A stretch of 64,000 nucleotides of DNA from Octopus bimaculoides. Its lineage: Eukaryota. Made by a program: the position numbers and the translations under genes. Shown piece after piece: positions 23,657 to 51,150 of the stretch (position 1 is the first letter of the stretch; the number at the start of each line of letters is the position of its first letter). Where the stretch lies: contig NC_068982.1 in NCBI RefSeq assembly GCF_001194135.2, positions 127,178,523 to 127,242,522 of the forward strand, read 5' to 3'. The notes beneath the pieces are model-generated. The model had not been told where the DNA came from, made no database searches, and saw only the letters and a list, made by a program, of their open reading frames with translations.

Positions 23657-24186
23657 CCTAACTAGTAAAGCTCGCAGTTGTCTCAGGTACTGAGCTTCGT
23701 CATCAAAGCTAGATGTGTCACTAACGTAATAACTACGATGAGTTTCCGACTAACACTTATATACACACCTTAACTCGATGTAGATCGCCTTTTGTTTGTT
23801 GTCTCTTCAATTCATTAACATTCTCTGACCAGCTTCTACTCGTTCTTTTTGTATGTATATTTATATATATATATAAAAGTAACACGAATACAAAATTATA
23901 AATTGATGTTTCGTTGTACATCATTTCAAAAAGTGTAGTTCTTTTTGTTTTCGTAATTTTTTTTTTGTTAATTATCTTTTCTAAACCGCTTTGCTGAAGT
24001 TGCTTATTTTCATCCTTAATGGTTTAAAGTTTAAGAAAAAGAAAGAAAAAAAATGAACCGAAGAAAAAAGTGAAGGAAAAGAGGAAAACAAACGATAACG
24101 CGAAGTTTTTTTTTATATATATATATAAATATATATTGTATATAATTATTATACTTTTAGAAAATTTGCAAAAGAGAAATAACGAT

Positions 24187-24676
24187 ATGTATATGTGGAA
24201 GCGAATAGTTTTAATTTCTTTCATAACAGCGAGTTTTTTAACTCTTGTTGTTGTGGCAGCCCTATCAGATAGTCTGGATTTTAAAACTTTAACTGTACCT
24301 TTATTCGAAGTGGGTGAATTTTGCAAGCATGCTGTGTCCACTGTAACTACAGATGGCTGGAGTGACCTGCTTGCACGCAATTATCTGGACTTTTTCCTTT
24401 TGTTTCGTATTGGAGTATACGCCACCCTGGCTTATGTGACCATTAGTATTTTGCGCTGGCTACACCAGTTTCTCTTCTGCACCATGGATCGGACACGTGT
24501 ACTGGGGACCACTGGATATGTACCCGATGGTGTACTCAGTATGAAAGAAATCGCTAACGGTGTACGTCGGCGAAGACGAGTCGGGGATATTCCACCTGTT
24601 TATCCCAATGGCTGGTTCGGATTAATTGAATCTCACAAACTGGCAATCAGACAGACTGTTCCTATAAGTATATTAG
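24187..24676 (+). CDS. nvd: Cholesterol 7-desaturase (Neverland/DAF-36, Rieske oxygenase), first coding exon (163 codons + 1 nt)
   Basis: MYMWKRIVLISF...WLHQFLFCTMDRTRVLGTTGYVPDG..KEIANGVRRRRRVGDIPPVYPNGWFGLIESHKL..ISILG matches the conserved Nvd/DAF-36 N-terminus (TM helix, GY, ANxVRRRRxxGxLPPxYPNGW..LG) that immediately precedes the Rieske domain. Strong donor AG|GTAAGT at 24676/24677, phase 1. The start could be ATG 24187 or 24193. The upstream Lys-rich extension to 24070 is probably UTR. Confidence 0.92.
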
Positions 24677-24895
24677 GTAAGTCTATTAAAAGTGCATTTA
24701 TTTATTTATTTATTTATTTATTTATCAATCTGTCTAAAGCTCTTAAACTTCGTTTTTAAATATACATTAATATGATGTAGAAAAAATAAAATAAAATCTT
24801 AACTTCGAAATAATTTCGTTGAACATAACAAAATAATGCACTACCCTCTCGCTCTCACACACATTCTCTCTCCTCTTTCTTTCTTTCTTTTTTCC

Positions 24896-24933
<38 letters not shown>

Positions 24934-25710
24934 TATGGTATACCTATCTATATATCTATCTATATGACAGGATTTCATCCTGTCTTAAGGTGTGTAACCT
25001 GAGTAGCTCTTGTCCAATAAATTGCTGATTAACGCAGGATATCAAACTTTATTCCCACTCCCCCACCTTCAAAAAAAAAAAAAATGCGGAAAAAGAAAAA
25101 GACAAATTTCCTCGTGGAAAACTTGGGATTGCCCAAGGAAGATAGGAGTGAAATGTCGGGAAATAATACTTCTACAAAATTATGAAATATTGTTTATGTT
25201 GCGACCGCGCTTTTCTTCATAATTCTCAGTGACAAAACAAATAAAATATAAGTATTGCACTGGTTCATCCACCTAATATTACTGGTATTTAGTATTCAAT
25301 TTAAAATGAAGCAGGAAAAGTTAATAGTAAGTTATCTGGTTTCGATTCCAGTAATAACTTTATCCTCCTGGTTTCACGATTCTGTTTTTGATAGTTAATT
25401 ATTGTAAGTTCAAATCCAATTCAAATTTACTTTGAGGCCGATAAATAAAATACTGAGGTAAATCAACAAGATATTAGATCGACAGTATTAGATATTGAGG
25501 TGGATCCACATAAATTATTCCCCAAGAAGTTGATCGTGTTTATCCATAGTCGAAATTTTAATACTGCGTGTGTACCTTCAGTAATTAGAATACTTTTTTT
25601 CTAAAAATCGAATCTTTTTCCGACAAAGTTCAAACTTCCAAAATAAAGCCTACACCTTAAAAAGTTCGTTTTAGCACTATCAACAACTTTGCAAACAGAA
25701 ATGATTAATG

Positions 25711-25853
<143 letters not shown>

Positions 25854-25979
25854 CAAACTTTTGCCACAAGGGCAGCTTGGGGGAGGAGATTAAGTCGATT
25901 ACATCGACCCCAGTGCGTTACAAGTATTTATGTTATCGACCCCGAAAAGATGACAGGCAAAGTCGACCTCGGAGGAATT

Positions 25980-26016
<37 letters not shown>

Positions 26017-26255
26017 TGATGATAATAATAACTGAATTTCAAAGAAGGAAATTTTTCTTTATAAAGGTATTTATTTTTTTAAACTTTGATAAAGAATCTT
26101 CATCATAAATCGAAGAAAATTTGATAAATTCATAAAGATTCTGTCAAATGAATTCTGGAAAAAAAAATCATTCATTGAAAAAGACTCGGCCAAGTTAAAC
26201 CAAAATATAAAGTATCGACTTTAGGATATAGCTACATAAATGCGCCCCCCCCCCC

Positions 26256-26700
26256 TACCTGACTTTGTTTCCTCATAACTTTCAGAAAAATGTGTATTTT
26301 TATATGAAGTTTATTTCTAGGTTCCGATTATATTGGAATTTGTTGTGAAAATTTCTTGTGGGGAGAGGAATTTCGGAAAATTCACACGAATCGGCTTTGT
26401 TTCCTTATAACTTTCAGAAAAATGGGTATTTTGTAATGAAATTTTCTATAAATACTTTTCAGACGGTATAGATTACGTTTATATCGGGATTTGATAAGAA
26501 AATACAAAACATTTTTCTGAAATTTATCAGGAAACATAGCGGACTCGTGTGAATTTTCCAAATTCTTTTACCCATCCTTAGAAAAAAATTTCACAATTTT
26601 CGGTATAATCGGAATCTACACCATTTGAAGCGTATTTGTAGAAGAGTTCATTGAAAATATACACTTTCTGGAAGTTATGAGGAAACAAAGTCGGGTGGTA
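26256..26700. mobile_element. Fold-back DNA transposon/MITE with internally repeated arms
   Basis: GACTTTGTTTCCTCATAACTTTCAGAAAAATG at 26261 is inverted at ~26655-26692 (..TTCTGGAAGTTATGAGGAAACAAAGTC). A second copy of the same unit occurs at ~26395 and, inverted, at ~26506-26540. TA lies at both outer ends. Confidence 0.75.
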
Positions 26701-27429
26701 GCATACTTGTGTGGGTATGCTGACTTCAATGCAAGTTTTGTTGTAAGTCATGTATTTAGAGTTCGCATATCAAGTCCGTAAAAGTTACACACACACACAC
26801 ATACACACACACACACACATACAAATACACACAATACACAAAAAGACGTGTGTATGCGTGTGTGTGTGTATGTGTACGGACGTTGATAAGGAATTAGCTA
26901 CAAATGTTCTGTTTGTTATGTTTTTGCAAAATTTTCCGTTTGTTGTTTTTTTTAATTATTGATTTATATATATATATATATATATATNNNNNNNNNNNNN
27001 NNNNNNNNNNNNNNNNNNNNNNNNNNNNNNNNNNNNNNNNNNNNNNNNNNNNNNNNNNNNNNNNNNNNNNNNNNNNNNNNNNNNNNNNNNTATATATACA
27101 TATACAAGGTGCGATGAATGAGTCAAGTTGCTTTTAATACCTTATGAATTCATTCATTAAATATAAAAATGGGGGCTATCTACGAAACAATGAATTTTCG
27201 ATTAACTTCACACGTGAAACTGATATCTCTTACACACACACACACATCTATAAATGGCGAAGAATTATTTTATAGATCTGTATTTATGAGTGAGGATTAT
27301 ATTTGTGTGTTAGCCTAGGTGTTTATGTACGCAGTTTTTTTCCTGGGAAGATTGCGTAATCTGAAAACATGGAAAAGTGGAAAGTCTACGCATTAGACGC
27401 TCGCTGTTTTGTTATTATTGAATATTAGT

Positions 27430-27547
27430 AATCCTTCGGTATTAATAGACGACGTCATTCACCCACACAACGTTCCCTCACGACATAAATAAAGAGGCTA
27501 GGCTGAAAAAGAGGGTGAATGACGTGGTCTACTAATACCGAAGGATT
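27430..27547. repeat. 35-bp inverted repeat (33/35) with 48-bp loop
   Basis: AATCCTTCGGTATTAATAGACGACGTCATTCACCC versus GGGTGAATGACGTGGTCTACTAATACCGAAGGATT. Confidence 0.85.
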
Positions 27548-28187
27548 GCCGTAAAAAGACAAACAGAAACGTACCCACACACATCCCAGCACGTTTCGTT
27601 CTTTTAAATAAGTTGTTTCGAAGTTGTAGATTTTGATTTAACCAGATCAAACCAAACTATCGATTGAATTCCGTTAGAGGCTAAAAGTGAAAATAGAAAG
27701 AAACCTTTTAATTCTATGTACAGCAAATGTAGTTTCTGAACCATGACGACATTCCTGATCACTTTCATTAACAATTGTTTTCACTAATTAGCGTTTCAAT
27801 TTTGCAAATTGCAATTTAGTGTCAATAAAAGTCTTGTTACTCGTTCGTAGTTACTTTTCCCGCGCGACTGTCACGTGTATAGACTGTTTATCTCAATAAC
27901 TGACTAGTCCGTCAAGCGGAAGTGAACTGTGGTTGTGTATTGTCAGGTATCAATAACTTCGCTGCTCTGCAACCCAAAGTCAGGTAGAGTGGCATCGATG
28001 TTGCCCCTTCGATTCGTTTGTAAAGAAAAAAAGAAAAAAAACAGAAAAATACTTGGCTTCCACGAGTGCTTTCACACACTTCGATTATTTGTAGCCGAAT
28101 TGTCTCTTATTTCACTGTCTAATTCAATACACCCCCTAAACTTTCGTGTGCATAGTCATCACACATATTTCAGAGTAATAAAAGCTG

Positions 28188-28225
<38 letters not shown>

Positions 28226-29440
28226 CTTTTTGTGAACTTTTAGACGGGAGGAGAAGGCGGAGTCCGTGACCGTTCACAATGTTTTTATACGGGTGGGAGG
28301 GAAGGAGAAAACCGGACACATTACTCGAATGCTCACAACAGAATGGACTCTGTTAAAGACCCCCGAGGTGCCAGGTGATGATGTTTAAAGCAGGCGACGG
28401 ATTTAGTCAACCATCCAAGTAGGCCATGACAAGATTTGAACTCAGAGCGCAAAGTCAATTCACAACCTTAAATTGATAGTCTTTTTATATCGACTCCGAA
28501 AAAAACGAAGTACAAAATTGACCTTGGTGACAATTGAACTCAGAGCATAGGGCGTCGGAATATAGCCACAATGTTGATATTTTGTTTTTAAGGTAGTTAT
28601 AAATATTTATTCTCATTTTTTTACCAACATTCAGACCTTTGAGGCGATTTCCTGCTTATACCAGGTTTGTTGTGGTTTCTGTCGAAACCATTCGGTCTTT
28701 CTTTTAGCCTTGCATTCGCTCTTATGATTCAGGTCGCATAGATTGGACATTGTTGCTACTACAGAAACTAGATTGAGAAGACCGCGGGCTTTCCCTCCCC
28801 TCCTAAACGACTACGAGAAATTAATTTCTCTATGCCAACCTGGGGGGGGGGGCGGAGAGGTGTTTGCGGTCCTACTCAGGAAAAATTTGAATTTACATAT
28901 AAGAACAATCTTCTTTGAAGAAAGTGGCTTACATGTTGAGAATGAACATACTTAAGGGATGACATAAAGCTTCTGAAAAGGTCCAGCGGTGGAACGTGGT
29001 ATGTAGGGTCACACCCGTTCATCACTTCATCATCATCATTACATAATTTTATTTATCATAAATTTGTATAAATAACGTTTATTCCCCTCTCCCNNNNNNN
29101 NNNNNNNNNNNNNNNNNNNNNNNNNNNNNNNNNNNNNNNNNNNNNNNNNNNNNNNNNNNNNNNNNNNNNNNNNNNNNNNNNNNNNNNNNNNNNNNNNNNN
29201 NNNNNNNNNNNNNNNNNNNNNNNNNNNNNNNNNNNNNNNNNNNNNNNNNNNNNNNNNNNNNNNNNNNNNNNNNNNNNNNNNNNNNNNNNNNNNNNNNNNN
29301 NNNNNNNNNNNNNNNNNNNNNNNNNNNNNNNNNNNNNNNNGGGGGAGGAGGGGCCAGTCGATTAGATCGACCCAGTACTCAACTGGTACTTAATTTATCG
29401 ACCCCAAAATGATAACCTCCAAATTTATCGACCCCAAAAG

Positions 29441-29595
29441 CGCCGCCTTTAGTTGAACAAACCGACACCAGGACTTATTCTTTGTAAGCTTAGTACTTAT
29501 TCTACCAGTCTCTTTTGCCGAACCGCTCAGTTACGGGGACGTACACACCAGCATCCGTTGTCAAGCGATGGTGGGGGCACAAACATAGACACACA

Positions 29596-29648
<53 letters not shown>

Positions 29649-29696
29649 TTATACGATGGGCTTCTTTCAGTTTCCGTCTACCAAATCCTCTCACAC
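29441..29696 (-). mobile_element. SINE family C, 3' and central part
   Basis: GGACTTATTCTTTGTAAGC..GAACCGCTCAGTTACGGGGACGT..(CA)n..GGGCTTCTTTCAGTTTCCGTCTACCAAATCC. Confidence 0.85.
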
Positions 29697-31574
29697 TTCT
29701 TTTCATCTTGCTCCTGTTCCTTCAACCGTAAATGCGTAACACTTCGACGGACTAGCGTCCCGTTCTAGAGGAACGTTGAGATTTCGGTCACTTATCGGGA
29801 TACCGGCCCTATAATTCCTACCACTGGGGTCAATAATATTTTGCAGACTTACGTTTTTTATAACATATGAAAATGAAATAAGAAACGAAAATCAAAACTG
29901 CAATTGAGTAAAATTTTTAAACGGAAAATCGGTTTCATTGAACTATAGCAGTCGAAATTCTGTAAATATAGATTACATTGAGAGAAAAACAAAATAATTT
30001 TCGTTGAATATGTCAGCTGCAAAACATAGCTGAGAATTGAGTTATCAGTTCAGTGTGAATAAAAAGCTTGAACTCAGAATGTAGAGAAAGAAGGAATGAA
30101 TATATGTTGGGTTGTGTCTGCTTGTGTCGAGTTATAATAAAAACAATTTAAGATTAAAATAAAGTACTAAATACTTTTACCAGAATGCACATAGTGTTAG
30201 AAAGTCGTTGTCACCTCTCTTCTTCTAGTTGTAGTTTATGTGTGTGTGTGTGTGTGGATGAACTTAGAACGTAATGGAACATAGCTTAAATGTCAAATAG
30301 CATCTGGTTCGACACCATGCCATAATTTCAGTCACTCATCATTCTATAAAATATTGAAATGTGTCTTTGCTATACCAAATTATATAATAGTTATTCTTTC
30401 ACTTGAGTAAAATCTTTAAGAAGAAAATTCTTAGAAAATCTCTTTGGCGAACATATTCTCATATTTAATATAAAAGTCAAAATAAAACATCCGGTAACTC
30501 TACTCGAAGCAAACTAACAGAATTGCAGACAGTCCCAGGGATATAAAGTGTCCAAATGTTATATATTACTTTTCTGATAAAACATAATCAGTATAAACCT
30601 ATATATATAAAATGAAGTTACTGTAAGAATTTTGACAGTCTACAATTTTATTTTTACAACTAAGTAACTTGACATTAAAATACAAACTACAAAAAAAAAA
30701 AAGGTTTTGATTTTGTGCGTGCATATGCAGGGACTTGAAGGATCTTGCGTCGCTTTTAATTCAAACTCTTATTTAATGTAACTATTAATTTTCTAAAATT
30801 AAAATACTAGAAATTATTTTTATGTTCGTTCAGGTTGCTTAAACTTGTTCTACATTACAATGTGAAATACTTTCTAAATTGTTTTCAATTATAATTCAAC
30901 CTGAAGTTAGACCTATTCTCTTTCGAAGCATTTCTTTCAATTCTTGCCATCTTCCCCTCTTGTATTTTAATTAATAACATAATTTTAATTTCTTTCTTAA
31001 ATCAGGCGGTAATCCAATAATGACACAGTCACGGTTTCCGCCGCGATCGACTCTTTTCAGATAGATAAAACAAGTACCATTTAAACACTGTGGTCGATGT
31101 AATTGAATAAACTAAAATTACTGACCTTGTGCCAAAGTTTAAAAACGTTACTGTCACGGTCTGGTGTTATTCAAGACCTAACATAATTTTAGAGGAGATT
31201 TGGAATATTTTTTTCAACTAGATAAACCTGTAGAAATAATATGATTGTTTTAATCATCTCTACATCGAATAGACAGGCATGCTTTACAAACAGTTAATTT
31301 AAAACTTGTGATTATCTGCAAGTTAAATGATGACATCTGTGTTAAATAACTGTCTTTTTTTTTTTTTTGGAAAATTACATTTAACCTTCCCACTGCATTC
31401 ATATCACCTTGCAATCATCGTACTAGCAGAATTGAAAGTGCTGTATTTGACATTCCCCTAGTTTGTCATCAAGAATACACTTTAGGAATGGGTAAATGAA
31501 ACTCAAGAAATAATCTAGCAGATTATAACTGCTCTATCTTGTTTCAGTTACCGAGAGTGTATCTACACCGGTGC

Positions 31575-31925
31575 CCTACCTTCAAAGGTTTAGTCGAACA
31601 TATCGACCTCACTACGTATTTTTTAATGCGATACATGTTCCATCGACTTCTTTTGCCGAGAGAATAACCGCTTATTCCTAGGGATGTAAAAAACCAACAC
31701 CGGTTGTCCAGTGATAGAATGGAAACACAACACACACGTGCGTGTGCTGTGTGTGTATTAGAGGGGTTTCAACACAGCTTCTGCCTACCAAATCCACTCA
31801 CAAGATATTGGTCAGTCTAGAGCTATAGTTGAAGAGACTTGCCCAAGGTACCGTGCAGTGGAACTGAGCCCGAAACAATGTGGCTGCAAAGCCAACTTCT
31901 TAACATCACAGCTAAGCCTGCGACT
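31575..31925 (-). mobile_element. SINE family C, diverged
   Basis: CTACCAAATCCACTCACAAG..GACTTGCCCAAGGTACCGTGCAGTGGAACTGA. Confidence 0.7.
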
Positions 31926-32589
31926 AGGTAATATAGTAGTTTCCTGAGGCAGATGATTCATTGAAAAATGCCTTCAGCTCCTAAATTAACCTTAATCAGT
32001 GGCGCGAGATTACATTTTCTACAATCTAGCATGGAATTTTGTATCACTTCTCACACTTTCTGAAATTACGATTAATACTTCGGTAATAAAGAATATATGT
32101 ATTTTTTAACGCTTATATTGTAAAGGTAAGCACCTAGGGAGTCGAACCGGAGGCTTGTTTTTGATTTTTGACATGTAACCAGTTTGCTTCCTCTTTTGTA
32201 ACTAAATGCACGTGGGAAACAAACATCACAACGTCTTAATTTTTTTTCTCTATTAGCCTTTTTTACCCGTCGTCAGAAATCAATGTTCATAAGGATTAAC
32301 TAGGTGAATTGTTAGTTCTTGACAATAATCTTATTTACTTGGATTGTTATTTCATGTATTGAGTTAATAAAATAGAGGTTGTGATAGTAATCCAAAACGA
32401 AGAACTTCACAGCATTGTTTTAAAATATTTTCTTTATCATTAATTTAAAACTTCAGTTTATTTTCTAACTTAGTTTTACGGAAGTGGTTTTGTCCTACGT
32501 ATGAGAGACACAGCAGAAGAAAGGAATTTTCAGTAACTGTTCCAATCCGCTTCATCCACTGTATCTATAGACTTACTAATTTTATAGTA

Positions 32590-32800
32590 CAGTAATTGCT
32601 CGCCATACCACGGTTCACCTATCGTGGTTTATTATTTAAGCGTACGTCGATTCCTCCGTGGTGTTGTTTTGCATTTATAATAAAATAGATGTATACAAAT
32701 TATAAAAATAATATAAAAACAATATACAATACAGTACTGCTTCTACTTCGAGAATTTTCACCTATCGTGGGGTTTTTTGGAACGTAACACTCCCTATTGT
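32590..32800 (+). mobile_element. Pogo/Tigger-like MITE fragment
   Basis: TA|CAGTAATTGCTCGCCATACCACGGTTCACCTATCGTGG, with CACCTATCGTGG repeated at ~32759. The right TIR is not intact. Confidence 0.45.
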
Positions 32801-35800
32801 CGAGACACGAACTCTTTCAAAACCTTCATGAATTCATAGTACTGAGAAAATGAAATACATTTCTTTCTGATCGCTGGTTTCTCAGATGATCTGCTTACTT
32901 TTTTCATCTAACAAGCCGAAGTCTATAAAATAAAGAAGTATTTTGCCCATATAAACAATGCAATGCTCCTTGCGCTAAAAGTTCAATATATTATTACTTC
33001 GAAGGTTCCAGCTGTAAAGCACTTTTAATAAAGAATACCTATAAACAGACCCACCAATCTTTAAACTGCTGGTTTAGTGTTTATTAAACAGCACCTTTCA
33101 CTTTATAACCGCGACCTCTGCGTCAGCTATTTATGCGACCAAATGTCAATGTGTCAATTATGTTGACCGGAAGTTCAATGTTATATACATATTGGATTTG
33201 GGCAACCCTTTGGCGAGTCACAATGATGTAGGAGGAACAACTGTATGTATTCACATTCCTTGTTACTCTCTCTCTCTCTCTTTTAAGTTAACTGTCTCTT
33301 ACGAAGAAGTGACACAACTGTCACTTTTTCTCTGCAGACACCTTCCTAAACGCTCTAGTCACAGCTAGATGGGTTACCTTACAATATCTGATTAATTCAT
33401 TGAATTTATAGATAAGCAATTACATCGTGAATTAACCATCTTATTCATCTATAAAAATCAAAGATTGCTGGACTCACTTTTCATTTATTCCTAGATGTTT
33501 CAAAATTTTCGTTGCACTATTGCGACCTGGCCACTGACAGTTCAAAAATAAATAACGCTGTACAAATGACCTCAAATCACAATGATTGCGACAAAAATTG
33601 TAACAGTTTCTCTGTTTTTTAGGTGGCTTGAGTAGCTTTTCCACAATATAATGCTTCATTTACTACGAAAGATTTCAGATTAAGCCACTCACTTGCTTGA
33701 CAAGTACAACTCCAAATTGATTAAAACAGTCGGATGTCATTTTCTGATTCATTAATATCATTCTCCAGTCTCTGCGTTTTGTGCTAGGAAACTTCAGAAA
33801 AAAACTTGATATCATGCCGGGAAAAACTCAATTATTTACACATTCGCATCCAATCATGTGGCTTTCGCATGTAATATTCGCTAACCAGATATGTTTCTAC
33901 CTTGTTGCACGTCCCCTTTTGTGCCATAGAAGCATTTCTCAATAAATGTTTTTTTCTTTTTCTGAATGCCCTTCAATGTCCTTTCCTCTCGTCAGTCTTG
34001 AATTGTTTTATTATAATAAATGCAGTACAACACCAATATAATAAATGTTAATTGCAGCAGAATTATCAATAAAATGTTAAATTATATGATGACGTTATTT
34101 CGTCGGCAAATGTAAGATTAGGCATTTAACGCTGATTTCATAGATAAAAATAAAATGTAGTAGTAGTATTTATAAAGAAGACCAATGAATAGATTGCTAC
34201 ATTGTTCTTGCTTTCTCAAGTATATTGGTGACATTAAGAGGTGTAAGCGAGATTCGAAATTTGACTCGCGTATTTTGCTTGTTGAGAGTTTATTTCAACT
34301 CAACAGTGTTTATCATTTGACTGTTTAAAAAAGTATTATTTTCGTATATTAGCACAAAGATAAAATCAGTTGGGTTAGGAACAGGTAGATTAATATATCT
34401 AACATTACCCCCGATACCTATTTCGCAACAGGATAATGAAAAGCTATCAAACTTTGCAGGATTTGATCTGAGACCATAACTGATCTCTACTCGTTACTTG
34501 AAGGTATCTTGTCCAGTGCACGACCTCTTGTCACAACCCGAAGATTGCGTTATGCTGGTGACAATATAGATGAAACTGTAGTCAATTCCACACCATTTGG
34601 GGTTTAAAACCCTCCCTGTGTTGATAAACATAATACCTTAAATACGCTTGTGTGCTGATACTTTAAACTAGTTTCAGTTATAGGGAACCTGTGATAATTT
34701 GAGAAATGGACGGAACAATTACCATACTTAATAAAGATTTTAAACTTATATAACACGATGGGAAAGCTAAAGAAACATTTTATAGATACCGACTCTGTTT
34801 TGTCTCCTCGTTAATAAGTGTGGGGGGTAAAAGTTACAGCTAATAAATTTTGGCTAAGTTTGCTATTTGTCAGATTGGGAATCAATGCTTTAAGTTATTA
34901 GTTGGCATTTCCCTATTTATCTGATCGGATCAGAAATAAAGTGCAAATGAGAAACCGTAAAAATTTGGGTAGCGGCATGATTGACCAAATCAATATAATT
35001 ATACCAACATCTTGTGTCGAATGCGTATAGCTTACTTGCTGTATACAAAGAAACTTCAGAAACTAAAGGTTTTATGCAGTAAATAATAGGCTTTGAAATC
35101 TGTATAAACTGAAAGCAGAGAGAAGGACAAAGCTTTTAAACACGTTAAAGTTAAAATCCTTATTCTAAACATCTTAGACTTGCTTAATTATTGACTTCAC
35201 TTGACACAGAGTTTTAGATTTATAGGTGAGAGATAAAAATGTTGTACTTTCATGTTTGCTCGTAGAGCAGAACTTCCAGTTTGGAAATGAAACTTAGTTG
35301 AAGACTCAATTCGCCGAAAAACCCACTCTTATGCGAAACAAGATTCCAAAGTGCTACTTTGGTGTGTGTGATCTACAATTTCAAGGGCGATTACTTCAGG
35401 TTAAGTTTTAGTTTCTTTACGTTGCAAAACTCGCGGCTGCCAAACTTTTGTGATCTATGCGATTATTTTAATTATTATATTGTTTATTCGTGGTTTCTTA
35501 TTGCTATTTACTAAACATAAATGGAACATGGTTTTATTATTATTAAAATAGTAAGAATTTTGAAAAAATACATTTACAAATTATGTATAAAAGAATTTAT
35601 TGTAAAAAGTCTGTTGTCAACATAGTAAGTCCTTTTAGAAATTGGAAAGTAAACTAAAAAAGTAACCTATAGTAATCGCTCTGTAGGTTGTAGATCACAC
35701 GCCAAAATAGCAGCGTCTCCAAACCACACTCCTACAAAGAAATACTAAGAAATGAAAAAAAAGAAAAAGAAGAAAAATCATGACTAGACAAGGTCTGTTA

Positions 35801-35932
35801 GTTTTTGGAATAAACTTAGCCTTTTCAGCTTTAGTTATGTTTTAATTCTTGTTTTAACGAACTCATTATAATATGCTTCTTGAGTCCATAGCTTAGCTTT
35901 ACGCTTCTTCCCTTTCATTTCAAGAGCACTCA

Positions 35933-36156
35933 TTATAATTATTTCTACCCTAGGCACAAAGCCTTGAAAATTTTGGGGGAGGGGGAATAGTCGATTACAT
36001 CGACCCTAGTGCGTAACTGATACTTTATTTCATCGATCCTGAAAGGAAGGAAGGCAAAGTCGACTTCGGCGGAATTTGAACTCAGAACGTAGTTGCAGAC
36101 GAAATATCGCTAAGCATTTCGTCCGGCGTCCTAACGATTCCATCAGCTCGCCACCT
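35933..36156 (-). mobile_element. SINE family B, full length
   Basis: Reverse complement of GGCGAGCTG..AATCGTTAG..TTCTGAGTTCAAATTCCGCCGAAGTCGACTTTGCCTT..ATAAAGTATCAG..TGTGCCTAGGGTAGAAAT. Confidence 0.9.
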
Positions 36157-36923
36157 TGAGAGCACCCATTGTAATGGCGGCCCACATTTGGTTTCTTCTG
36201 TATATAGTCACATAGCATGAAACTAACTTTATATACGCCCGCCCGCGCGCGCATACACGGAAGAAACCCATACACAACTACATTTTACATTTTTATGTCG
36301 TACTTCCATGATGTTTATTTTTAGTATTCACGATAAACCTCATTTACCTTAGGGGAATTTATGATTTTATTAGAGTTTCCGGTGAAAATAAGGTCTTTCT
36401 TGCGATAAGACTAGTTAACTACAATAAAATTGATTTGCATAGTCCGTATAATTAATTTAATTGGAATTTGATGTCCCAGCTAAGAAAGAAGTATGCTCTC
36501 AACTTAACACAATGAGCGAAATATTCAGACACCTTCTATAAATATTTAAATTTCGAGCATTCTTAAAATAACGAAGAACATATGTATAACCGTTAGTATT
36601 TTTTAATACATGTTTAACGACTCGACTTTTCTTCGGAACATTAACAAAAGTGGTAAGCCGTTGTCTCTAATTTCCTATATATTTTCAGGTGACAGAATTT
36701 GGGGATACATTTTGTAGCTCAGACATTTAACTAATTTTTAAAACTTTATTATTTTTCCTGTAATGATAACCATACGTGAGAGTAAAGTTTCCTTTCGTCA
36801 AACCATTTTATTTGGCCGGGAAGTTCAAGTTATGGTGTTAATTTCTGATTCCTTGTAGACTGGTATACTCAACTAAAATTTGAAAGTATACATATTTTGG
36901 AAAATTGTTACACCGTGAATTTT

Positions 36924-37303
36924 AGGCGCAGGTATGGCTATGTGGTAAAAAATTTACTTCCTAACTACATGGTTCTGAGTTCAGTCCCACTGTATGACAC
37001 CCTGGGAAAGTTTCTTCTGCCATAGCCTCGGGCTGACCAAAGACTTGTGAGTGGATTTGGTTGACGGAAACTGAAAGAAGCCCGTCACATACACACACAC
37101 CCACGTGTGTGTGTGTGTCCCCACCACTGCTTGACAACTGGTATTGGTGTGTTTACGTCTCCATTAATTAGCGGTTTGGCAAAAGAGACTGATGGAATAA
37201 GTGTCAGGCTTTAAAAAAAATAAGTATTGAGGTTGATTCGTTTGACTAATAATTTTTCACGGCGGTGCCCCAGCTTGACCGCCGTCAAATGACTGAAACA
37301 AGA
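36924..37303 (+). mobile_element. SINE family C (CORE-like), full length
   Basis: AGGCGCAGGTATGGCTATGTGGTAA head, GGTTCTGAGTTCAGTCCCACTG B-box-like, internal CA/TG tract, AAATGACTGAAACAAG tail. Confidence 0.88.
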
Positions 37304-39425
37304 GAATGTTCATTATAAATTTGTCTTTGGTTATTGTATTTGTTCATATAAGAAATAAATGAAACACCGGAGATCGCAATTGAGCAATAGATAATGTCTG
37401 TGCGAGTCTTGATCAGTAACTTATTTCGCTTCCCCGTTGAAACCACTTCACCTCATTTTTAAGTAGTTAGTCTGCTCGAGAAAGGCATGAACATTATACA
37501 ATCATGTTTTTTCTTGTGAATTTATACCTTTGCATTCAGTTAGAAATCCATAAACATAGTCACCGGGCGTTTACAAAATAAAACAAAAAAATATATAACC
37601 CCACAACATGTAAAGCTAATCTGTTTGAACCGAATGAACCTTTGAACTAATCCATTACCTACCAGGAGAACAATAAATCTGAGGGTTTGCTGATCGTTGT
37701 GGTTATTTATTTTATTGTTCATTATTGAAGAAAAGAAATGAGATAAAATTGACATTTTTATGAAGTCGCTTCTTTGTCAGAAGCTCCATGTATTATTTTA
37801 TTAGATTATTTTTATTGCGGATATCATTTTAAAATTGCAAATCTGTAAATATTTAGCGGTGTCTTAATCACAAAGGTCTATCTGATTTAATAGTTTAATC
37901 TCGGTATTTTATATCATGTCCTTATCTAGATTGTCAGTACTTTTTTTTTTTTTTCTTATTTGGTTTAATTATAAGAAAGCGCTACTTTGCAAACACATTA
38001 TAGTCTTTATGTCCCAGTCAACTTTTATCTCATTACAGCAAGTACACTAGGGTTGAATACTTATTTCACATCAGTGTTACAAGAGAGCATCGAAGTATTC
38101 GTAGATATGTCTAATAATTGTTTGTAATTTAGACACAAGGCCAACAATGTTTTGAGAAAGCGTGAAACTATCATTTTCTGTGAAATCAATTCTAAGAAAT
38201 AATTAGTAGCAATTATTAGCAATCAATGTTCATTCTATAATGACATAAATATGCTGTACGAGGATAAGCTATAAGTTGCGCCAGAAATTAGCTTTTATAA
38301 TGTGTGCTTTATTTACAAAAATTATTTTAAAATCTCGAGAATTTACTAACGTCCAGTCTTATATTTTTTTTTATTTTTCGAGTTTGCCAAATAGCTTTAT
38401 AAAAATTGCTAACTACCTTTCTTTTTATTGGCGAACGTCTTGTTTTTTAGTATGTTAATATACTATAGTAAACGTTTTCATATTCAATGTTTTTTGCACA
38501 ATGAAATAAATATACGAATTATGACAGAGTGATCATACGTTTGAAAGTTTAATTTCTGTGGCTTACAGAAGTTCTATTTTTCACTTGGTCCCTAAATATG
38601 TGGTAAGCCCTTCACCTCCTCTCGCTATTGAGAATCGCAGAAAATTCTAGTTTCACAACTGCATAGAAGCCTGATTTTTGTTAGCAGGCACAGCGAAAGC
38701 TATAGGCATGATTTTATTTTATTTTATTAAGCTGCATTACTAGAATATAATCACCTGGAGCCCTTTAGATCAAAGCATATAGACCTTTACAAGTAGAAAA
38801 ATGAGTTGCGAACAATTTCGAAATATATCTTATTTATCTGCTCTTCCTCTATCTCTTATATACACACATGCAAAAGATGTTGAAGAAATCAAAGATTGTT
38901 ATAATTTAATCATATATTTTATTAATTTTGGAGGTGAGTATTTAAAAAAACTGCTTTGTTTCTTTTTTCATTCTTTCATTTCTGTTTTTGCTACAACTGC
39001 TCTGCTTTGATTTTATTTAAAATCTTTGTGCTAACGTCTCATTAGTCAGGAGTCGTTGCGACTTATATAGTTTTGCAAAAAAGTCTTACCATTAACGTTG
39101 AGAGTTACCTGAAGCATGCTTGGTACTAGTTCAAACGTTGTGTTTCATGTTTTTATATTTCAGTTAGATAGTGGTTTCTGCAGTAGAAAATAAAATTTAT
39201 CACCTTCCGAGAAGGCAATTATTATTTCTTTTCCCGATCTTCAGGATCACCAAAAAGCCGCTTTATGTTCGTAAATTAGACATTTAATCAAACTGAAAAG
39301 GAGGGAAATAGAAACACCAAATTGTTAGAAAATCTGGCCCCAATAGAAAAAGTCCGAGTTTCGATATTATTAGATCTCAGCAAAATACATTCTCAGTAGG
39401 CAGACTAATGAATGATATGCATGTG

Positions 39426-39470
<45 letters not shown>

Positions 39471-41606
39471 GATAGAGTGGCGTTGATTATGAATAGCAAC
39501 GTTATAGCTGAACGGGAATTATAGCAGTGGACTAACTGTTCTACATACTAAATACAAGTACGGCCAAGACCCACATGTATAATATAGTTAATGTTGAAAG
39601 ATCGATCCATCGGGATTATCTATACAATAATTAAGATCCCCTTCTCGAAGGTCTATTAAATCTGATTACTGGTTTTGCAAGTTGCTTCAACTTTTCGTAA
39701 AACGTTCCCTGCCGTAGAGGACATTCCGGTATGTTCGCCATCTTTAGTTACTTAGGATAGTCGTTTTTGTAGCATTGTAAATGCAAGGGCGTAATATATT
39801 TGAGGGAAGATGTACACAGTCGATTTAATCAACCCCAATACACAGCAGCTACTTATTTTATAGTCGGAAAATAGAAAAATAAAATCAGGCCCGGTCCAAT
39901 TTCAGTTAGTATTGCAAGGGGTTTTACCCAACACTACACTGAATCATCTTTGACTGCATGAATTAGTCTTAAGTTAAAACTGCGGCTATGAAACTGATGC
40001 TGTTTTTTTTTTCTGAATACTATCGCTACACAAATAAGATATCTATACGGACGTTTTCAGAAGCAACGACTGAGATTAAATTAAGACAGCAAAAATGAAT
40101 GGAAAAAAAAAAAAAACGTATATATTGAAAGTTGAATGTAGTGTCACATTATTCATAGCGAAATAATAAAAGACATGAATAGATTATAGATCCAACCAAG
40201 TGTTGCTAGGATAATTGTTTAAAAACTACGTGGTATTTCATGCTTTTTTTAAAGTAGCTTATGCTGTCATGAAAATATAACTTGTTTAATAAAAATAAAT
40301 AACGGGTCAGATAAATTTTGCAGCGGATCATTTGTCGGTTGTTCGTGGATTTATATGTTAAATGCTGAATTAATTCATCTTTTTCATTATTTCACGAAAG
40401 AGTTTATGACCAATAGAATGAAATTTCTGAGCTAATGACCTCCGGTTGCGGTATCCTGCTTTGAGGGTGACAATCACCTTGTCACTGTCATAAAAAGACA
40501 ACCTCTCGCTTCAGGAAGTTTTCTGTTTTCTTTATTCAACAGATTGATTAATTTTCGTCGTATGTAAAGAGTCAAGCTTTTAGATGTATGCCTAACAAAA
40601 GAAATTGAACAAGAAGTTAGAAGTATTGCAAGCCGATAGAGGTTAGATTCTTGAGTGGGAGCATACATGAACTACATACTACCCATCAGATTAAATATTA
40701 TTTAGTGCCCTGACAACCAAGCTATGTAGTCTTTACATGCTTAATATCTCACGCGTCGTTTTCCCAATGTAATTTATTGGGTTGATCATAAATGGTTATT
40801 GAATAAGCTTTTGTGTGTTTAGAACATTTAGAAATTCACTAGTTGCTACTGCAGTCATGTCAGCACTTCGGTGATCATATACTTGCTTTCTAAATCTTAT
40901 TTTTTTCAAGTTAATAAATACAAACTAATGCAAGTTGTTCTATTTAGTTCGTATACGGCGTTGTTATAAATAAGCAAGGATATAGTTATTACTTGCATAT
41001 AACGTCGTAGTTTCAATTCGTAATTGATATCTTAGATTTTTCAAACGCAAACTTTGTTTACAGTTTTTAATTTTCATAAGATTTCACTGTTTTTGTATTG
41101 TTTTAATTCTGAGTATTGTATCCAATGCCGAGATTGTAACAAATAAATTGAAAACGAAGAAATGAATGTATCAGATTCTTATTTCCTGTACGTGACTAGG
41201 GTAAAACCATGGCAACAGATTTCGTTTTCGTTTTATATCAGTAACTTACCCTGGAGATGGATATAATTTCCAGATTATATCCATGCAAGAATTTGGACCC
41301 TGTGCTGCACACTAATGAACCATTCACCAAATATACAATACCACCACTGCGTACAATAGTAAAGATAAGTTTCGATTTCTTTATATCTCACCAATAAAGT
41401 TCAGAAACGGTATTAATATCATCGGAAAATTTAAATTAAAGAGAAATATTTCGAAGTTATTAATAAACAAGAGCTGGCAGTTTTAAAAAATGGAATGAAA
41501 TAGAAACAAACAATCTGGATGAGTCCAATAACATTGAAATGACTTTCACGGAGTGGTTCGTTCAAACTGATGAAGTTTGTGAAGGTTGTAGCAGCATTAC
41601 CTACCA

Positions 41607-42025
41607 TACTTGTATAAACAAGAGAGGAATTGCTCTCGTCAGCAAGTCACATATTGCCTCCTTGACCAACATCAAAAATACAAATGGAGAAACTTAGTAA
41701 AAGCTAATTGACTGCTGTAGATTTCGGGCGTGACTTATTGGTCTGGGTGTTCGGCTTACGATCATAAGGTCGTGAATTCGATACCCAGTGACGCGTTGTG
41801 TCCTTGAGCAATATACTTTATTTCACATTGCTCCAATAAGAAAAAGAGAAACAATATATCTTTTGTTGAGAAAAGGTTCCATTTTCAACGAAGACAGTAG
41901 ATTGATGATGTTTGGGTTCACCTCTCTGAATTTTAAAACTTTATTTTCGATCTGATAAATTCTACTTGTATAAACAAGATAGGAATTGCTCTCGTCAGCA
42001 AGTCACATATTGTCCCCTTGCCCAA
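41607..42025. repeat. Local 63-bp duplication (59/63 identical), 356 bp apart
   Basis: 41607-41669 versus 41963-42025 (TACTTGTATAAACAAGA(G/T)AGGAATTGCTCTCGTCAGCAAGTCACATATTG...). Confidence 0.85.
41726..41835 (+). mobile_element. SINE family D (CORE-like), 5' fragment
   Basis: GGCTTACGATCATAAGGTCGTGAATTCGATACCC..GTTGTGTCCTTGAGCAATATACTTTATTTCACATTGCTCCA. Confidence 0.75.
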
Positions 42026-43440
42026 TTTAGGTGACGACTACTTTTGTATCTCCCCTTAACTATGAAATTCAATGAACCACCAGATAATTCTTTACTTATT
42101 ACCAAATCAGGTTTGCATAAATGCTTCTGAACTATTTGTTACAAATTTGAAATAGAATAATCTTAAAGACTGATGTATCTTATATCTTTATTGAAATAAA
42201 TCAAAAACTATAGAATTAAAAAAAAATAATCTGGTTGAAAATAATATAAATTGCAAGAGACCATGACTGAGCAGACGACACTTTAGTTTTGACAGTGTGA
42301 AGCAAAAGAGAGAAATCTCTGCATACGACGCACATTTATCACAAATATCATTTTCAGATAAGTTTATAAATCAGCTATCTATCTATTCCCCACAGCTTAG
42401 TCCACATCAAATTGTTTAGTAGCAGAGTGAAATTCCTATAACCGATTTGCACCCAGAAACATTTATGTACTTTTTTCTTCAAATTGTCTTAATATTAACT
42501 ATATATCTTTCTTAAGGCCAACTTTTAAGACATACAGTTAACTAACACAATTTAAGAATTTCATCTATCAATCTTATTGTTTAGATATATTGCAATTGAC
42601 TTCTTTTACTTAAAGGATAGAATGGTGAAGTGAAATAATAAATTTAGTTTGAGGCCTTTTTCACTCTGCTTCTTTTCTTGAAAAAAATTTAAGTGCTTAC
42701 GCGAATATTTTAACGTTTCATAACATCGTCCGCTTAACGAGGATTACAATTGAAAAATCTAATTAAAATAGAGTATCTTAATTAGTAGGAAACTTAGATG
42801 TGTTTATTAAAAGTTTTAAACAGATGCGTATGAGCGCTAGAAAACTGTTTGTGGGCTTTAACTTTAAGTGTTGAAATAGCCTGATCACAAATGAGGAATT
42901 TAAAAAAATCTTTAGTTTATATTGCCTATTTATTTTTGTAAATTAAGTTTTAATGAAAATTCAGACAGCACACAGTAATTTGTATTAAATTTCATATTCA
43001 GTATAAAATATAAACTTATAAATGTATGTACTTTCGTTTGTCAAACTGTGTCTGAGCGTTGTTGCTTCCAAATGTGTCACTTGTATTGTTCACGGTACTT
43101 AACATTTTTTATCTTCCTTCAAAGAGTGTCTAGCTGTAAAATTCATTGCTCATTCTTCTGCTTGTTTTGTTTGTGGTTGGTTGTATTTTCGAAATTTTGT
43201 CTATAAGGCAGCATTGATTCTGCTTTTCTATGCTTTTTTGATTGGATCTAAAGAAAAATAATGTTCAACTGTTTTTTTCCTCCTCAAAAAGGTAAGGAAT
43301 AAAAAAAGAAAAAAAAAACGAAAACAGATCCCTTTTTTAAGTTGTAGATTTACTAGATACGACATACAAATAAAAATGCAATTGCCAAAGAAAATTAAGA
43401 AATCGCAAATCTACTTGAAACGTATCTTTGCGACGCAAGG

Positions 43441-43646
43441 TAATAATAATCCTTTCTACTAAAGGCACAAGACCTGAAATTTGCAGGGAAGGGAGCAGTC
43501 AATTATGTCGTACTCAGGATTTCACTGGTAGTTAATATAAAAGCAAAGTTAACCATGGCGGAATTTGAACTCGGAACGTAAAAACGGACGAAGTACCGCT
43601 AAGCATTTTGCCCAACGTGCTAACGATTCTGCCAGCTCGTCGCCTT
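43441..43646 (-). mobile_element. SINE family B
   Basis: GGCGGAATTTGAACTCGGAACGTAAAAACGGACG..GCTAACGATTCTGCCAGCTCG. Confidence 0.88.
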
Positions 43647-44127
43647 AAACAAGCACAATTTAAGTAAAAAAAAAACAAAAAAAAAAACGTAGTGGGGGAA
43701 ATGTAGAAAAACGAAATAAAAGAATTACACTGTGTACAGTTAAAATAAATACTGAAAAGAAATAGACCTAAAGTTTTGGGTTATGCCTTTTTAGAATAAA
43801 AGTGAATGGCTTAAGTGAAGGAGGAGAAAATGAAATAGGACCGTACCAAATTTACGACGTCCGTTTACAGTGCACATGAGTATAATTAAGTTAAATATAA
43901 ATAAAACAAACAAATAAGAGCAATCCACCAACAAACGGGTGAAAAGTCGTCACCTTAGTTTAATCGAGGCACACCACGATACTAATTGCCTTCAGAGTCC
44001 GTATACCCTGTATCTGTGTCACTGAAAATATTCGGCCTCGAAATCCGTGTGCAACTCATGTGGCGGAGTAGGTGGCACACGTCCTCTTAATGGTAAAGAT
44101 ATAGCAGTTAATATCCCTTTCTATGAA

Positions 44128-44348
44128 AAGCGGTGAGCTGGCAGAAACGTTAGCGCGCCGGTAGATTTGCTTAGCGGTATTTCGTCTGCTGCTATACGTT
44201 CTGAGTTCAAATTCCGCAGAGGTTGACTTTTCTTTTCATCCTTTCGGGGTAGATAAATTAAGTACCAGTTGCATACTAGGGGAGATCTAATTGACTGGCT
44301 CCCATCCTCAAATATTTCGGGCCTTGTGCCTAGAGTAGAAAAGAATAT
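44128..44348 (+). mobile_element. SINE family B, full length
   Basis: GCGGTGAGCTGGCAGAAACGTTAGC..GTTGACTTTTCTTTTCATCCTTTCGGGGTAGATAAATTAAGTACCAG..GGCCTTGTGCCTAGAGTAGAAAAG. Confidence 0.92.
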
Positions 44349-45894
44349 CCCTCTAAGATGGTTTAATCTTTTGATTGCTCCACATAATCGGAACTCATCT
44401 CTTCACAAATTTATACTTGAAATTTTACTTGATCTTCATATAATCCGCTTAGATTATCTATCAATAAGTGGTTTCTTATTCGAAACGCTTTAAACTTCAT
44501 GATTTCCCATGAAGAGATGAGCTATTCTTCGGCTCACTTGTTTTAAAAAAATATTTTTCTTCAGAGATTTTCTTTTTCCACTGCCCTCGATAATTTGTAC
44601 TTTCGTTCCTCTTCGTTCATCATACCCTCATTACTGCAATTCGACGAGTTGATGATATTGGTTGCGACGAGCTGGAAAACCCTAGTTCATGGTTTTCCTT
44701 GGAGCCGACACGGATCAGTTTCTGTGATTTGTTGTTGTTGTTACCCGTGCTGTGCCTCACTTTCTCTCTTTGTGTACATTTTCAGGTTCTCTGAGTTACA
44801 AGCCACCAAATAGCTCTTATTTTCAAACATAGACCAGGACGGCTTTCTGCCTTGCACAACCGGTCTTATCGCTATTCTCTCTTTGCCAACGATGAACTGC
44901 TGTTCCGAATAATTCGGTGGTCATCTGAATCATTTAGGACTTGCATGCCATACAGACTCCCCTCTCCCGCAACCGACCACATACCATTTCTGGTCACCAA
45001 GGCGCTTACCAGCTACTTATATTGTCTCGAAAAAGTTACTGCAAGCAAAGAATCAATGCTGATGCTAATAATGTTTTCTGTGATCCTTGAGTTACGACGC
45101 CCTGTGTAATGAATGGGTAAACAGTATTTGATGAGGAGTTTGAGGCACCATCTTGACCTGTTTTTCTTTTGTTTTTGAGTTTTTTTCTGCTTTGTCCTCA
45201 CTACTGAAAAATATGCACACAACAAATACACTGCGCAACGGTCAGTGACAACCATACTGTTCCACACATTGACTAGCGCTTCCTTTTATTCTTCCAAGAC
45301 CCTATTGAAAACTTTTCCATTTGTCAATATTCAAGAGTTTGAAACTTTTCTGGTTGCCTTATTTCCGGTAAAATCATTAAAGTGTTGTTTAATATCTTTG
45401 ACTGATAATATTAATGAAGCTATTTTTATTAATGCCTCTGTTAAAGTTTTTTGACATCGCAGCTTATGTGTGTTGTAGTGCGAAAGTCTGTATTTACAAA
45501 TGCAATCGTTTCCGAAATTATTTTTTTTCTCTATGTATTCTTTTCTTTTTAAAGTGCAAATATCTCTGTTAGCTTGTTTAATTGTCTCATGTTTATCTTT
45601 CTTCTTGATATATGTTAAACGTTTGGAGGCGTATTCCACCACCGACACCACCGATTCAGTGGATGACATGTTTGCAAAATTAAAAATAAAAAATTATCTG
45701 ACGGCAAAAAATCCACCCGCCAGAAAAGGAGTTAAAAAGACACAAAGACTAAACATCTCACCTAACCATGTAATGAGTCCACAAAACCAGACAAAAAGAA
45801 AAATTTAATCCTAGAAGTAATCCGATATTTTTAAAACTCCTGCAACTCGTATAAAACACATTTATTACTGGTAACCCTAAAAGCAGTGATAATG

Positions 45895-48902: not shown

Positions 48903-48928
48903 TAAAATATTATTTACAACAGTATTGA

Positions 48929-51115: not shown

Positions 51116-51150
<35 letters not shown>

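What the first reader, a model, noticed from the sequence alone, without database searches (positions are those of the whole stretch)
24187..24676. Neverland/DAF-36 cholesterol 7-desaturase in a probable octopus genome: an ecdysozoan-type steroid entry step in a cephalopod
Seen: an exon carrying the Nvd N-terminal signature (GY..ANGVRRRRRVGDIPPVYPNGWF..ISILG|gt). Established: Nvd/DAF-36 converts cholesterol to 7-dehydrocholesterol (7-DHC), the first step toward insect ecdysteroids and nematode dafachronic acids, and the family is absent from mammals. From recollection (verify): octopus optic-gland studies of post-mating maternal senescence reported raised 7-DHC. Inference: this locus could encode the enzyme that makes that 7-DHC and feeds an uncharacterised cephalopod sterol-hormone pathway. 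Molluscs may carry several paralogs, so this copy's role is open.
Basis: partly seen in the sequence, partly recalled or inferred. Interest (0 to 1): 0.72.

Follow-up and report, generated by a model that had tools for sequence, protein, structure and literature searches.

The report
First exon of a Neverland/DAF-36 gene
The window holds only the first coding exon of a mollusc-type cholesterol 7-desaturase (Neverland/DAF-36) gene, and both this animal-wide enzyme family and its link to 7-dehydrocholesterol in the octopus optic gland are already published.

Summary
Window 24187-24676 (+) is an intact 163-codon exon. It starts at an ATG and ends at a consensus G|GTAAGT donor. It is the longest stop-free frame in the window.

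It aligns from residue 1 to about 150 of proteins that NCBI names "cholesterol 7-desaturase nvd(-like)". The best named matches are molluscs (Mactra 43%, E 6e-33; Haliotis 40%).

Only this exon is present. The Rieske CxH/CxxH motifs, the non-heme-iron motif and the KshA_C domain are absent from all 64 kb, on both strands. The catalytic part must lie more than 39 kb downstream, so catalytic competence cannot be judged here.

- "Ecdysozoan-type" is wrong. Named orthologues occur in sponges, cnidarians, nemerteans, many molluscs, amphioxus, fish and amphibians.
- The central inference is already published for Octopus bimaculoides. That covers transcriptomes (2018), lipid mass spectrometry (2022, as cited by later papers) and in situ hybridisation (2023).
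- The octopus origin of the window could not be tested.
- Whether this locus is the optic-gland "isoform" remains open.

Verdict: a real feature, correctly named, already known, of low interest.

The parts
24187..24676 (+). First coding exon of an Nvd/DAF-36 (cholesterol 7-desaturase) gene: ATG to the last exon base, 163 codons plus 1 nt (phase 1).
   Evidence: Searches give the sequence and translation. Homology: E 1e-44 to P0001. The exon aligns to residues 1 to about 150 of named mollusc cholesterol 7-desaturases. Its Met1 aligns with their annotated Met1.
24677..24682 (+). 5' splice donor GTAAGT at a conserved intron position, directly after the invariant ...LG.
   Evidence: One search gives the sequence. 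In 9 single-exon ORFs from other animal assemblies the frame also runs past LG into K, R or E (GGT AAG / GAG / AGG), as expected for read-through of a donor at the same place. The sponge-like locus L002 has no intron there and continues QNFAVFRD....
24196..24276 (+). Hydrophobic segment 1 (residues 4-30), a predicted N-terminal signal-anchor or transmembrane helix.
   Evidence: Kyte-Doolittle 19-residue window, peak 2.62. Named Nvd proteins have an equivalent hydrophobic N-terminus.
24391..24453 (+). Hydrophobic segment 2 (residues 69-89), a predicted second membrane segment.
   Evidence: Kyte-Doolittle peak 1.78. The position is conserved in the alignment but the sequence is not.
24562..24618 (+). 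Family signature just before the Rieske domain: VRRRRRVGDIPPVYPNGWF (residues 126-144).
   Evidence: P136 P137 V138 Y139 P140 N141 G142 W143 F144 and R130 are invariant, and V126, R129 and G133 nearly invariant, across 11 sequences. The same block is present in named Nvd proteins from sponge to Xenopus. In KshA the homologous stretch is PTRFARGWH.
24613..24675 (+). Start of the Rieske [2Fe-2S] domain fold (WFGLIESHKLAIRQTVPISIL). The cluster ligands themselves are not in this exon.
   Evidence: In the L002 homologue, Pfam Rieske PF00355 starts at the residues equivalent to GWFGL (residues 55-138 of 393). The window exon alone gives no Pfam hit.
24150..24160 (+). Possible 3' splice acceptor (tatacttttAG) 27 nt upstream of the ATG. 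If used, a non-coding 5' exon lies further upstream.
   Evidence: Sequence only. This is an inference, and no transcript data are available.
24683..64000 (+). Presumed intron 1, at least 39.3 kb. It is repeat-rich, contains seven N gaps totalling 1055 nt, and holds no further Nvd exon.
   Evidence: No CxH.GA, CPxHGW, DxxHxxxxH, WNNK or RRWY motif in any frame. tblastn with the L002 protein and 10 full-length mollusc and nemertean Nvd proteins finds only residues 1 to about 155. Interspersed repeats are listed.

Best explanation
Window 24187-24676 (+) is the first coding exon of a mollusc, plausibly cephalopod, orthologue or paralogue of Neverland/DAF-36.

What the exon encodes:
- an N-terminal membrane anchor (hydrophobic residues 4-30);
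- a loop;
- a second hydrophobic segment (residues 69-89);
- the basic RRRRR cluster and the PPVYPNGWF signature;
- the first strands of the Rieske domain.

Where the rest of the gene is. The exon is spliced at a conserved phase-1 donor (G|GTAAGT) to exons that lie beyond the 3' end of the window, more than 39 kb away. By homology, those exons carry:
- the Rieske CxH...CxxH [2Fe-2S] ligands;
- the mononuclear-iron motif;
- the KshA_C substrate-binding domain.

How the protein would work. This is inferred from established knowledge of the family, not shown here. The complete protein would be a membrane-bound Rieske non-heme-iron oxygenase. It would pass electrons from the [2Fe-2S] cluster to the catalytic iron and use O2 to remove the C7 and C8 hydrogens of cholesterol, giving 7-dehydrocholesterol. 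In octopus this enzyme family is already implicated in optic-gland steroidogenesis.

Shown: exon identity, exon boundaries and family assignment of the N-terminus. Inferred: completeness of the gene, catalytic activity, tissue of expression and host species.
For: - The exon is intact with a consensus donor, and it is the longest stop-free frame in the window.
- All 14 invariant columns of the exon-1 alignment are kept.
- The best named matches are "cholesterol 7-desaturase nvd-like" or hypothetical proteins of molluscs: Mactra P0031 at 43% over 159 aa (E 6e-33), Haliotis P0063 at 40%, plus Crassostrea, Sinanodonta, Liolophura and Nucella. All align from their residue 1. Bulinus "Cholesterol 7-desaturase" was found in the exhaustive search.
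- A homologue sharing the same signature (L002) continues into Rieske PF00355 (6.6e-21) plus KshA_C PF19298 (9.8e-25). Its nearest solved structures are KshA, 4qdc at 5.7e-35.
- The intron position is shared with exon-1 ORFs from many other animal assemblies.
- The closest relative's locus, L001, also has no second exon within 10 kb downstream, so a long first intron is plausible in this lineage.
- Literature: DAF36/cholesterol 7-desaturase is expressed in the O. bimaculoides optic gland together with its product 7-DHC.
Against: - No other part of the gene lies in the 39.3 kb downstream or anywhere else in the window. A complete gene is therefore assumed, not seen.
- The exon alone has no Pfam or PDB hit.
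- No transcript evidence is available.
- The species is not identified. No cephalopod protein with a name was retrieved.
- The published work speaks of "an isoform" of DAF36, and molluscs have tandem paralogues: two entries each on one contig for Gigantopelta and Saccostrea. This copy need not be the optic-gland enzyme.
Confidence: 0.88

Rival explanations
1. The exon belongs to a genuine Nvd-family paralogue that is not the optic-gland enzyme. It would be expressed in another tissue, or act on another sterol, so it would not feed the maternal-senescence 7-DHC pool.
For: The 2023 preprint refers to "an isoform of cholesterol 7-desaturase/Daf36". Molluscs carry more than one nvd-like gene on the same contig: Gigantopelta P0086 and P0097, Saccostrea P0060 and P0133. 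The nearest relative, P0001, is only 53-54% identical. That fits either a distant species or a paralogue.
Against: There is no second copy of the exon in the window. The exhaustive search found only one representative above 50% identity, so there is no direct sign of a close paralogue family. Nothing here says which copy the published probes detect.
Confidence: 0.3
2. The exon is an orphan: a partial duplicate or remnant whose downstream exons are lost. It would be a pseudogene fragment and make no enzyme.
For: No other Nvd exon is found within 39 kb downstream or 24 kb upstream. The surrounding DNA is dense in repeats and has no other detectable gene.
Against: 163 codons stay open in DNA where frames average 16 codons. 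Every invariant family residue is kept. The consensus donor sits exactly at the conserved intron position. The closest relative also has an intron longer than 10 kb here. From general knowledge, very long introns are usual in cephalopod genes.
Confidence: 0.08
3. It is a chance ORF or a mis-assembled contaminant sequence with no biological role at this locus.
For: The scaffold has many N gaps.
Against: E-values range from 1e-44 to 6e-33 against independent animal sequences. There is no N gap within 2 kb of the exon on either side: the nearest are 21701-22238 and 26988-27090. GC content and repeat context are continuous with the flanks.
Confidence: 0.01

Closest known systems
Neverland (Drosophila, Bombyx) / DAF-36 (C. 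elegans) cholesterol 7-desaturase family, including NCBI-annotated "cholesterol 7-desaturase nvd-like" proteins of molluscs (Mactra, Haliotis, Crassostrea, Bulinus and others)
   Same: The N-terminal architecture matches: a hydrophobic anchor, a second hydrophobic segment, then the [RK]RR+xGxxPPVYPNGWF signature leading into the Rieske domain. Alignment starts at Met1. Identity to mollusc members is 39-43% over about 150 aa. The intron position after ...LG is shared with many animals.
   Different: Only the first about 35% of the protein is present in the window. The catalytic motifs are not available. Residues 1-100 are poorly conserved outside the closest relative, P0001.
Octopus bimaculoides DAF36 (optic-gland cholesterol 7-desaturase; Wang & Ragsdale 2018, Wang et al. 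2022, and the 2023 peduncle-complex preprint)
   Different: Identity of this locus with that transcript could not be tested. The papers' sequences and primers are not in the held text, and the window's species is unknown.
Bacterial KshA (3-ketosteroid 9-alpha-hydroxylase oxygenase; PDB 4qdc, 2zyl)
   Same: It is the nearest solved structure to the full-length homologue, with Rieske plus KshA_C domains. The stretch PPVYPNGWF aligns with KshA PTRFARGWH at the start of the Rieske fold.
   Different: KshA is soluble and lacks the roughly 125-residue membrane-anchor region that makes up most of this exon. Its chemistry differs (9-alpha-hydroxylation). The exon alone gives no PDB hit.
Tetrahymena DES7 and the Capsaspora Rieske sterol C7-desaturase
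   Same: They belong to the same Rieske C7(8)-desaturase family according to the literature.
   Different: They are protist members. They were not compared at sequence level here.

Membership tests
Neverland/DAF-36 cholesterol 7-desaturase | Best matches are named family members, aligned collinearly from the N-terminus. | tested here: met
   127 of 135 collected proteins match. The named ones are all cholesterol 7-desaturase, nvd or DAF36. The mollusc proteins align at their residues 1 to about 150. add Bulinus "Cholesterol 7-desaturase".
Neverland/DAF-36 cholesterol 7-desaturase | Conserved signature before the Rieske domain: basic cluster, then G-x-x-P-P-V/I-Y-P-N-G-W-F/Y. | tested here: met
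   RRRRRVGDIPPVYPNGWF at residues 127-144. These columns are invariant.
Neverland/DAF-36 cholesterol 7-desaturase | N-terminal hydrophobic membrane anchor. | tested here: met
   Kyte-Doolittle segments at residues 4-30 (2.62) and 69-89 (1.78). This rests on a hydropathy scale only, not on a dedicated topology predictor.
Neverland/DAF-36 cholesterol 7-desaturase | Rieske [2Fe-2S] ligands C-x-H ... C-x-x-H. | tested here: inconclusive
   Absent from every frame of the 64-kb window. In homologues they begin about 22 residues after the exon boundary, so they should be on exons outside the window.
Neverland/DAF-36 cholesterol 7-desaturase | Mononuclear non-heme iron motif (E/D-x3-D-x2-H-x4-H) and the KshA_C C-terminal domain. 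| tested here: inconclusive
   Not found in the window. Present in the homologue L002 (PF19298, 9.8e-25).
Neverland/DAF-36 cholesterol 7-desaturase | Converts cholesterol to 7-dehydrocholesterol. | not testable with these tools
   Needs expression of the full cDNA and LC-MS.
Octopus optic-gland DAF36 isoform | Sequence identity with the published transcript, and expression in the optic gland rising after mating. | not testable with these tools
   No octopus sequence or primer is available in the held papers. No RNA-seq is available.

The most novel reading that the evidence does not exclude
This exon is the first exon of a cephalopod Nvd paralogue, or an alternative first exon, distinct from the published optic-gland DAF36 "isoform". 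It would give a 7-desaturase with a different membrane anchor, tissue or sterol substrate, meaning cephalopods have subfunctionalised the entry step of sterol-hormone synthesis.
Probability: 0.2. Interest if true: 0.4.

Novelty: already known. Interest (0 to 1): 0.2.

Why it matters
Nvd/DAF-36 performs the committed first step from dietary cholesterol to ecdysteroids in insects and to dafachronic acids in nematodes. In octopus, its product 7-DHC is one of the sterols that rise in the optic gland during maternal decline.

Locating the gene's first exon, and so its promoter-proximal region, is useful for annotation. It would also help anyone designing probes, knock-outs or reporter constructs in cephalopods.

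It adds no new biology. The family's presence across animals, including many molluscs, and its optic-gland role in octopus are already documented.

Tried and rejected
1. Looked for the rest of the gene in the window. Methods: regex for the Rieske, iron and C-terminal motifs in six frames; tblastn with ORFs of two related loci; tblastn with a spliced sponge-like homologue; and tblastn with ten full-length mollusc and nemertean Nvd proteins. Only exon 1 was found. The best other hit has E 0.13, lies on the wrong strand and contains stops.
2. Scanned the exon alone against Pfam and PDB. Nothing significant came up: TMEM18 at E 0.15 is below its cutoff, and the exon stops before the Rieske ligands.
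3. Tried to feed whole-frame translations to Pfam.
4. Tried to identify the species.
   - No tRNA or Rfam match.
   - No named close relative in the word-indexed search, the exhaustive search or the cluster look-up.
   - The closest locus, L001, shares only the exon at DNA level and no repeats.
   - The octopus origin therefore stays untested.
5. Tried to get the published DAF36 primers or accession. The table is an image and the supplements do not hold them.
6. Scanned eight other long ORFs in the window against Pfam. No family was found, so no neighbouring gene was detected.
7. The bacterial promoter and terminator scan is irrelevant to a eukaryotic locus.
8. Yoshiyama-Yanagawa 2011 (PMC3138242) is not held. 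Its content is cited only through papers that reference it.

Full report
**Observation**

- The exon starts at ATG 24187, with a second in-frame ATG at 24193.
- It holds 163 codons plus one base.
- It ends ...PISIL-G, followed by GTAAGT at 24677-24682. This is a consensus donor, and the intron is phase 1.

The stop-to-stop frame that contains the exon (243 codons) is the longest N-free frame in the whole window, where frames average 16 codons. The window is AT-rich (about 28-42% GC) and has 12 N gaps. No gap lies within 2 kb of the exon.

**What the exon is**

Two protein searches were run with the exon.
- A word-indexed search found 15 relatives.
- An exhaustive HMMER search of 1.84 billion representatives found 163 relatives. 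Only one of them, P0001, exceeds 50% identity (54%, E 3e-45).

Most hits are short single-exon ORFs called on eukaryotic contigs. They share an invariant block, R-x5-PPVYPNGWF-x4-S, and a nearly invariant ...LG. In nine of them the frame runs past LG into K, R or E. That is what read-through of a G|GT(A/G)AG donor gives, so the intron position is conserved.

One hit, P0015 at locus L002, has no intron there. It continues [33 protein letters not shown]. Later exons at that locus carry CIECPFHGW, IPENGADMSHLNYLH and RDMIAWNNK...RRWYSQFY.

The spliced 393-aa L002 protein was then characterised.
- It contains Rieske PF00355 (6.6e-21) plus KshA_C PF19298 (9.8e-25).
- Its nearest solved structures are the KshA steroid hydroxylases, with 4qdc at 5.7e-35.
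- Used as a query, it retrieved 972 proteins. The sources name many of them "cholesterol 7-desaturase nvd(-like)", "DAF36 desaturase" or similar.
- The named proteins come from sponges, cnidarians, nemerteans, a chiton, bivalves, gastropods, crinoids, hemichordates, amphioxus, fish and amphibians.

BLASTP of the window exon against this set matches 127 of 135 proteins.
- The best named ones are molluscs: Mactra antiquata P0031 (43% over 159 aa, E 6e-33), Haliotis rufescens P0063 (40%), and Crassostrea, Sinanodonta, Saccostrea, Liolophura and Nucella.
- The alignments start at residue 1 of those proteins. They end exactly at the residue before x-x-[FL]-AVFRD...DAYCPH.

The exon is therefore the first coding exon of an Nvd/DAF-36 family gene of mollusc type.

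**Anatomy of the encoded peptide**

- Hydropathy shows two hydrophobic segments, residues 4-30 and 69-89.
- These are followed by MDRTRVLGTTGY, a basic RRRRR cluster and the PPVYPNGWF signature.
- The last about 21 residues correspond to the start of the Rieske fold. In L002 the Pfam Rieske match begins at the equivalent GWFGL.
- A polypyrimidine-AG (tatacttttAG, 24150-24160) lies 27 nt upstream of the ATG. It could be an acceptor for an upstream non-coding exon. This is an inference from sequence only.

**What is not there**

None of the catalytic part is in the window.
- No frame on either strand contains CxH.G[AG], C.[FYW]H[GA]W, D..H....H, a plausible W[ND].K context, or R[RK]W[YF]..[FY].
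- tblastn with permissive settings finds only residues 1 to about 155, at 24193-24687. The queries were the L002 protein and ten full-length mollusc and nemertean Nvd proteins. The best other hit has E 0.13, lies on the minus strand and contains stops.
- The N gaps downstream total only 1055 nt. They cannot hide about 300 codons.

The remaining exons therefore lie beyond position 64000, so intron 1 is at least 39.3 kb, or the exon is an orphan.
- The reading frame is intact.
- All invariant residues are kept.
- The donor is perfect and sits at the conserved intron position.
- The locus of the closest relative, L001, also shows no second exon within 10 kb downstream.

**Surroundings**

- The window is packed with microsatellites and interspersed repeats.
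- One repeat family is about 275 nt long, with three copies at a mean column identity of 90% in the three-way alignment.
- Another is a family of at least six copies with an internal microsatellite. One end of its reverse complement looks tRNA-derived (GGTTC.GGGTTCAGTCCC).
- Eight other long ORFs gave no Pfam family.
- There are no tRNA genes and no Rfam matches.
- No second copy of the Nvd exon occurs in the window.

**Species**

I could not test "probable octopus".
- The nearest relative, P0001, sits on an unnamed 194-kb ENA contig. It shares only the exon with the window at DNA level: 75% over 145 nt, with no shared repeats.
- The nearest named N-termini are from bivalves and gastropods.
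- The composition, the repeat load and the very long intron are compatible with a cephalopod genome, but that rests on general knowledge, not on a test made here.

**Comparison with what is known**

- The family is not ecdysozoan-specific. One search shows named orthologues across Metazoa. PMC4967820 states that Nvd/DAF-36 orthologues occur in vertebrates except mammals and in ciliates, and it cites Najle et al. 2013, "highly conserved in animals". PMC6170570 found nvd homologues in numerous bilaterians.
  - Wang & Ragsdale (bioRxiv 10.1101/340984, 2018) report that cholesterol-metabolising enzymes rise in O. bimaculoides optic glands after mating. They discuss daf36/cholesterol 7-desaturase among them.
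[quoted passage not shown] 2022. It shows DAF36 in situ signal restricted to the peduncle complex and optic gland.
  - A 2026 preprint summarises the same findings.
- The word "isoform", and tandem nvd-like genes in other molluscs, leave open whether this particular locus is the optic-gland copy.

**Verdict**

- The "ecdysozoan-type in a cephalopod" surprise does not hold.
- The optic-gland hypothesis is already published.
- The window contains only the non-catalytic first exon.
- Confidence that this is exon 1 of an Nvd/DAF-36 family gene is about 0.9.
- Confidence that it is specifically the enzyme behind optic-gland 7-DHC is much lower, about 0.4-0.5, and is not testable here.
- Novelty: already known. 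Interest: low.

Noticed in passing
window 4824-5098 (-), 18978-19252 (+), 47100-47377 (+): An interspersed repeat of about 275 nt is present in three copies, with a mean column identity of 90% in the three-way alignment, which suggests recent activity. One copy abuts an N gap. Its translation produced the recurring spurious peptide "RLRQGMVANPAVLFHHNFLSLLLPVS".
   Followed up: partly
window 22359-22587, 29448-29702, 50963-51324, 60490-60848 (+); 36923-37091, 63093-63219 (inverted); also 31774-31905: A SINE-like family with at least six copies and an internal (CA)n/(TA)n microsatellite. The reverse complement of its 3' part resembles a tRNA-derived head with a B-box-like GGTTC.GGGTTCAGTCCC. ARAGORN calls no tRNA. 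The family fits the SINE-rich cephalopod genomes known from the literature, but was not matched to a named family.
   Followed up: partly
window 19976-20188 / 20332-20544: An inverted repeat with 213-nt arms, 92% complementary, separated by 143 nt. It may be a MITE-like or foldback element.
   Followed up: no
window 12860-13022 / 13112-13274: A 163-nt segment is duplicated in tandem at 98% identity, with a 252-nt period.
   Followed up: no
window N runs at 10321-10562, 19254-19700, 20846-20889, 26988-27090, 51380-51414, 60098-60422 and others: Many of the assembly gaps are flanked directly by (TA)n, (TACA)n or (CA)n microsatellites. That is typical of a short-read scaffolded assembly breaking at simple repeats. 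Two gaps have the same length, 325 nt (57178-57502 and 60098-60422).
   Followed up: no
window 58835-59540 (+) and 498-1146 (+): These ORFs look, from memory, like decayed transposon proteins: the C-terminal region of a LINE reverse transcriptase (...RDLGVIVDNNLNWSAHI...LEYCCPL) and a Helitron- or PIF1-like fragment. Pfam gave no hit at E <= 0.1, so this stays unconfirmed.
   Followed up: partly
L002 11600-12300: An intron of the sponge-like Nvd homologue holds a long minisatellite that a gene caller fused to the CIECPFHGW exon, giving a 321-aa ORF ("HIEVCMYSRP" repeated). This locus also lacks the intron after ...LG that most other animals share.
   Followed up: no
The word-indexed protein search with the exon returned none of the full-length named Nvd proteins, for example Mactra P0031, which shares an 18-residue identical stretch. 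A later search with a different query retrieved them. The index is lossy for short queries, so absences should not be over-read.
   Followed up: yes
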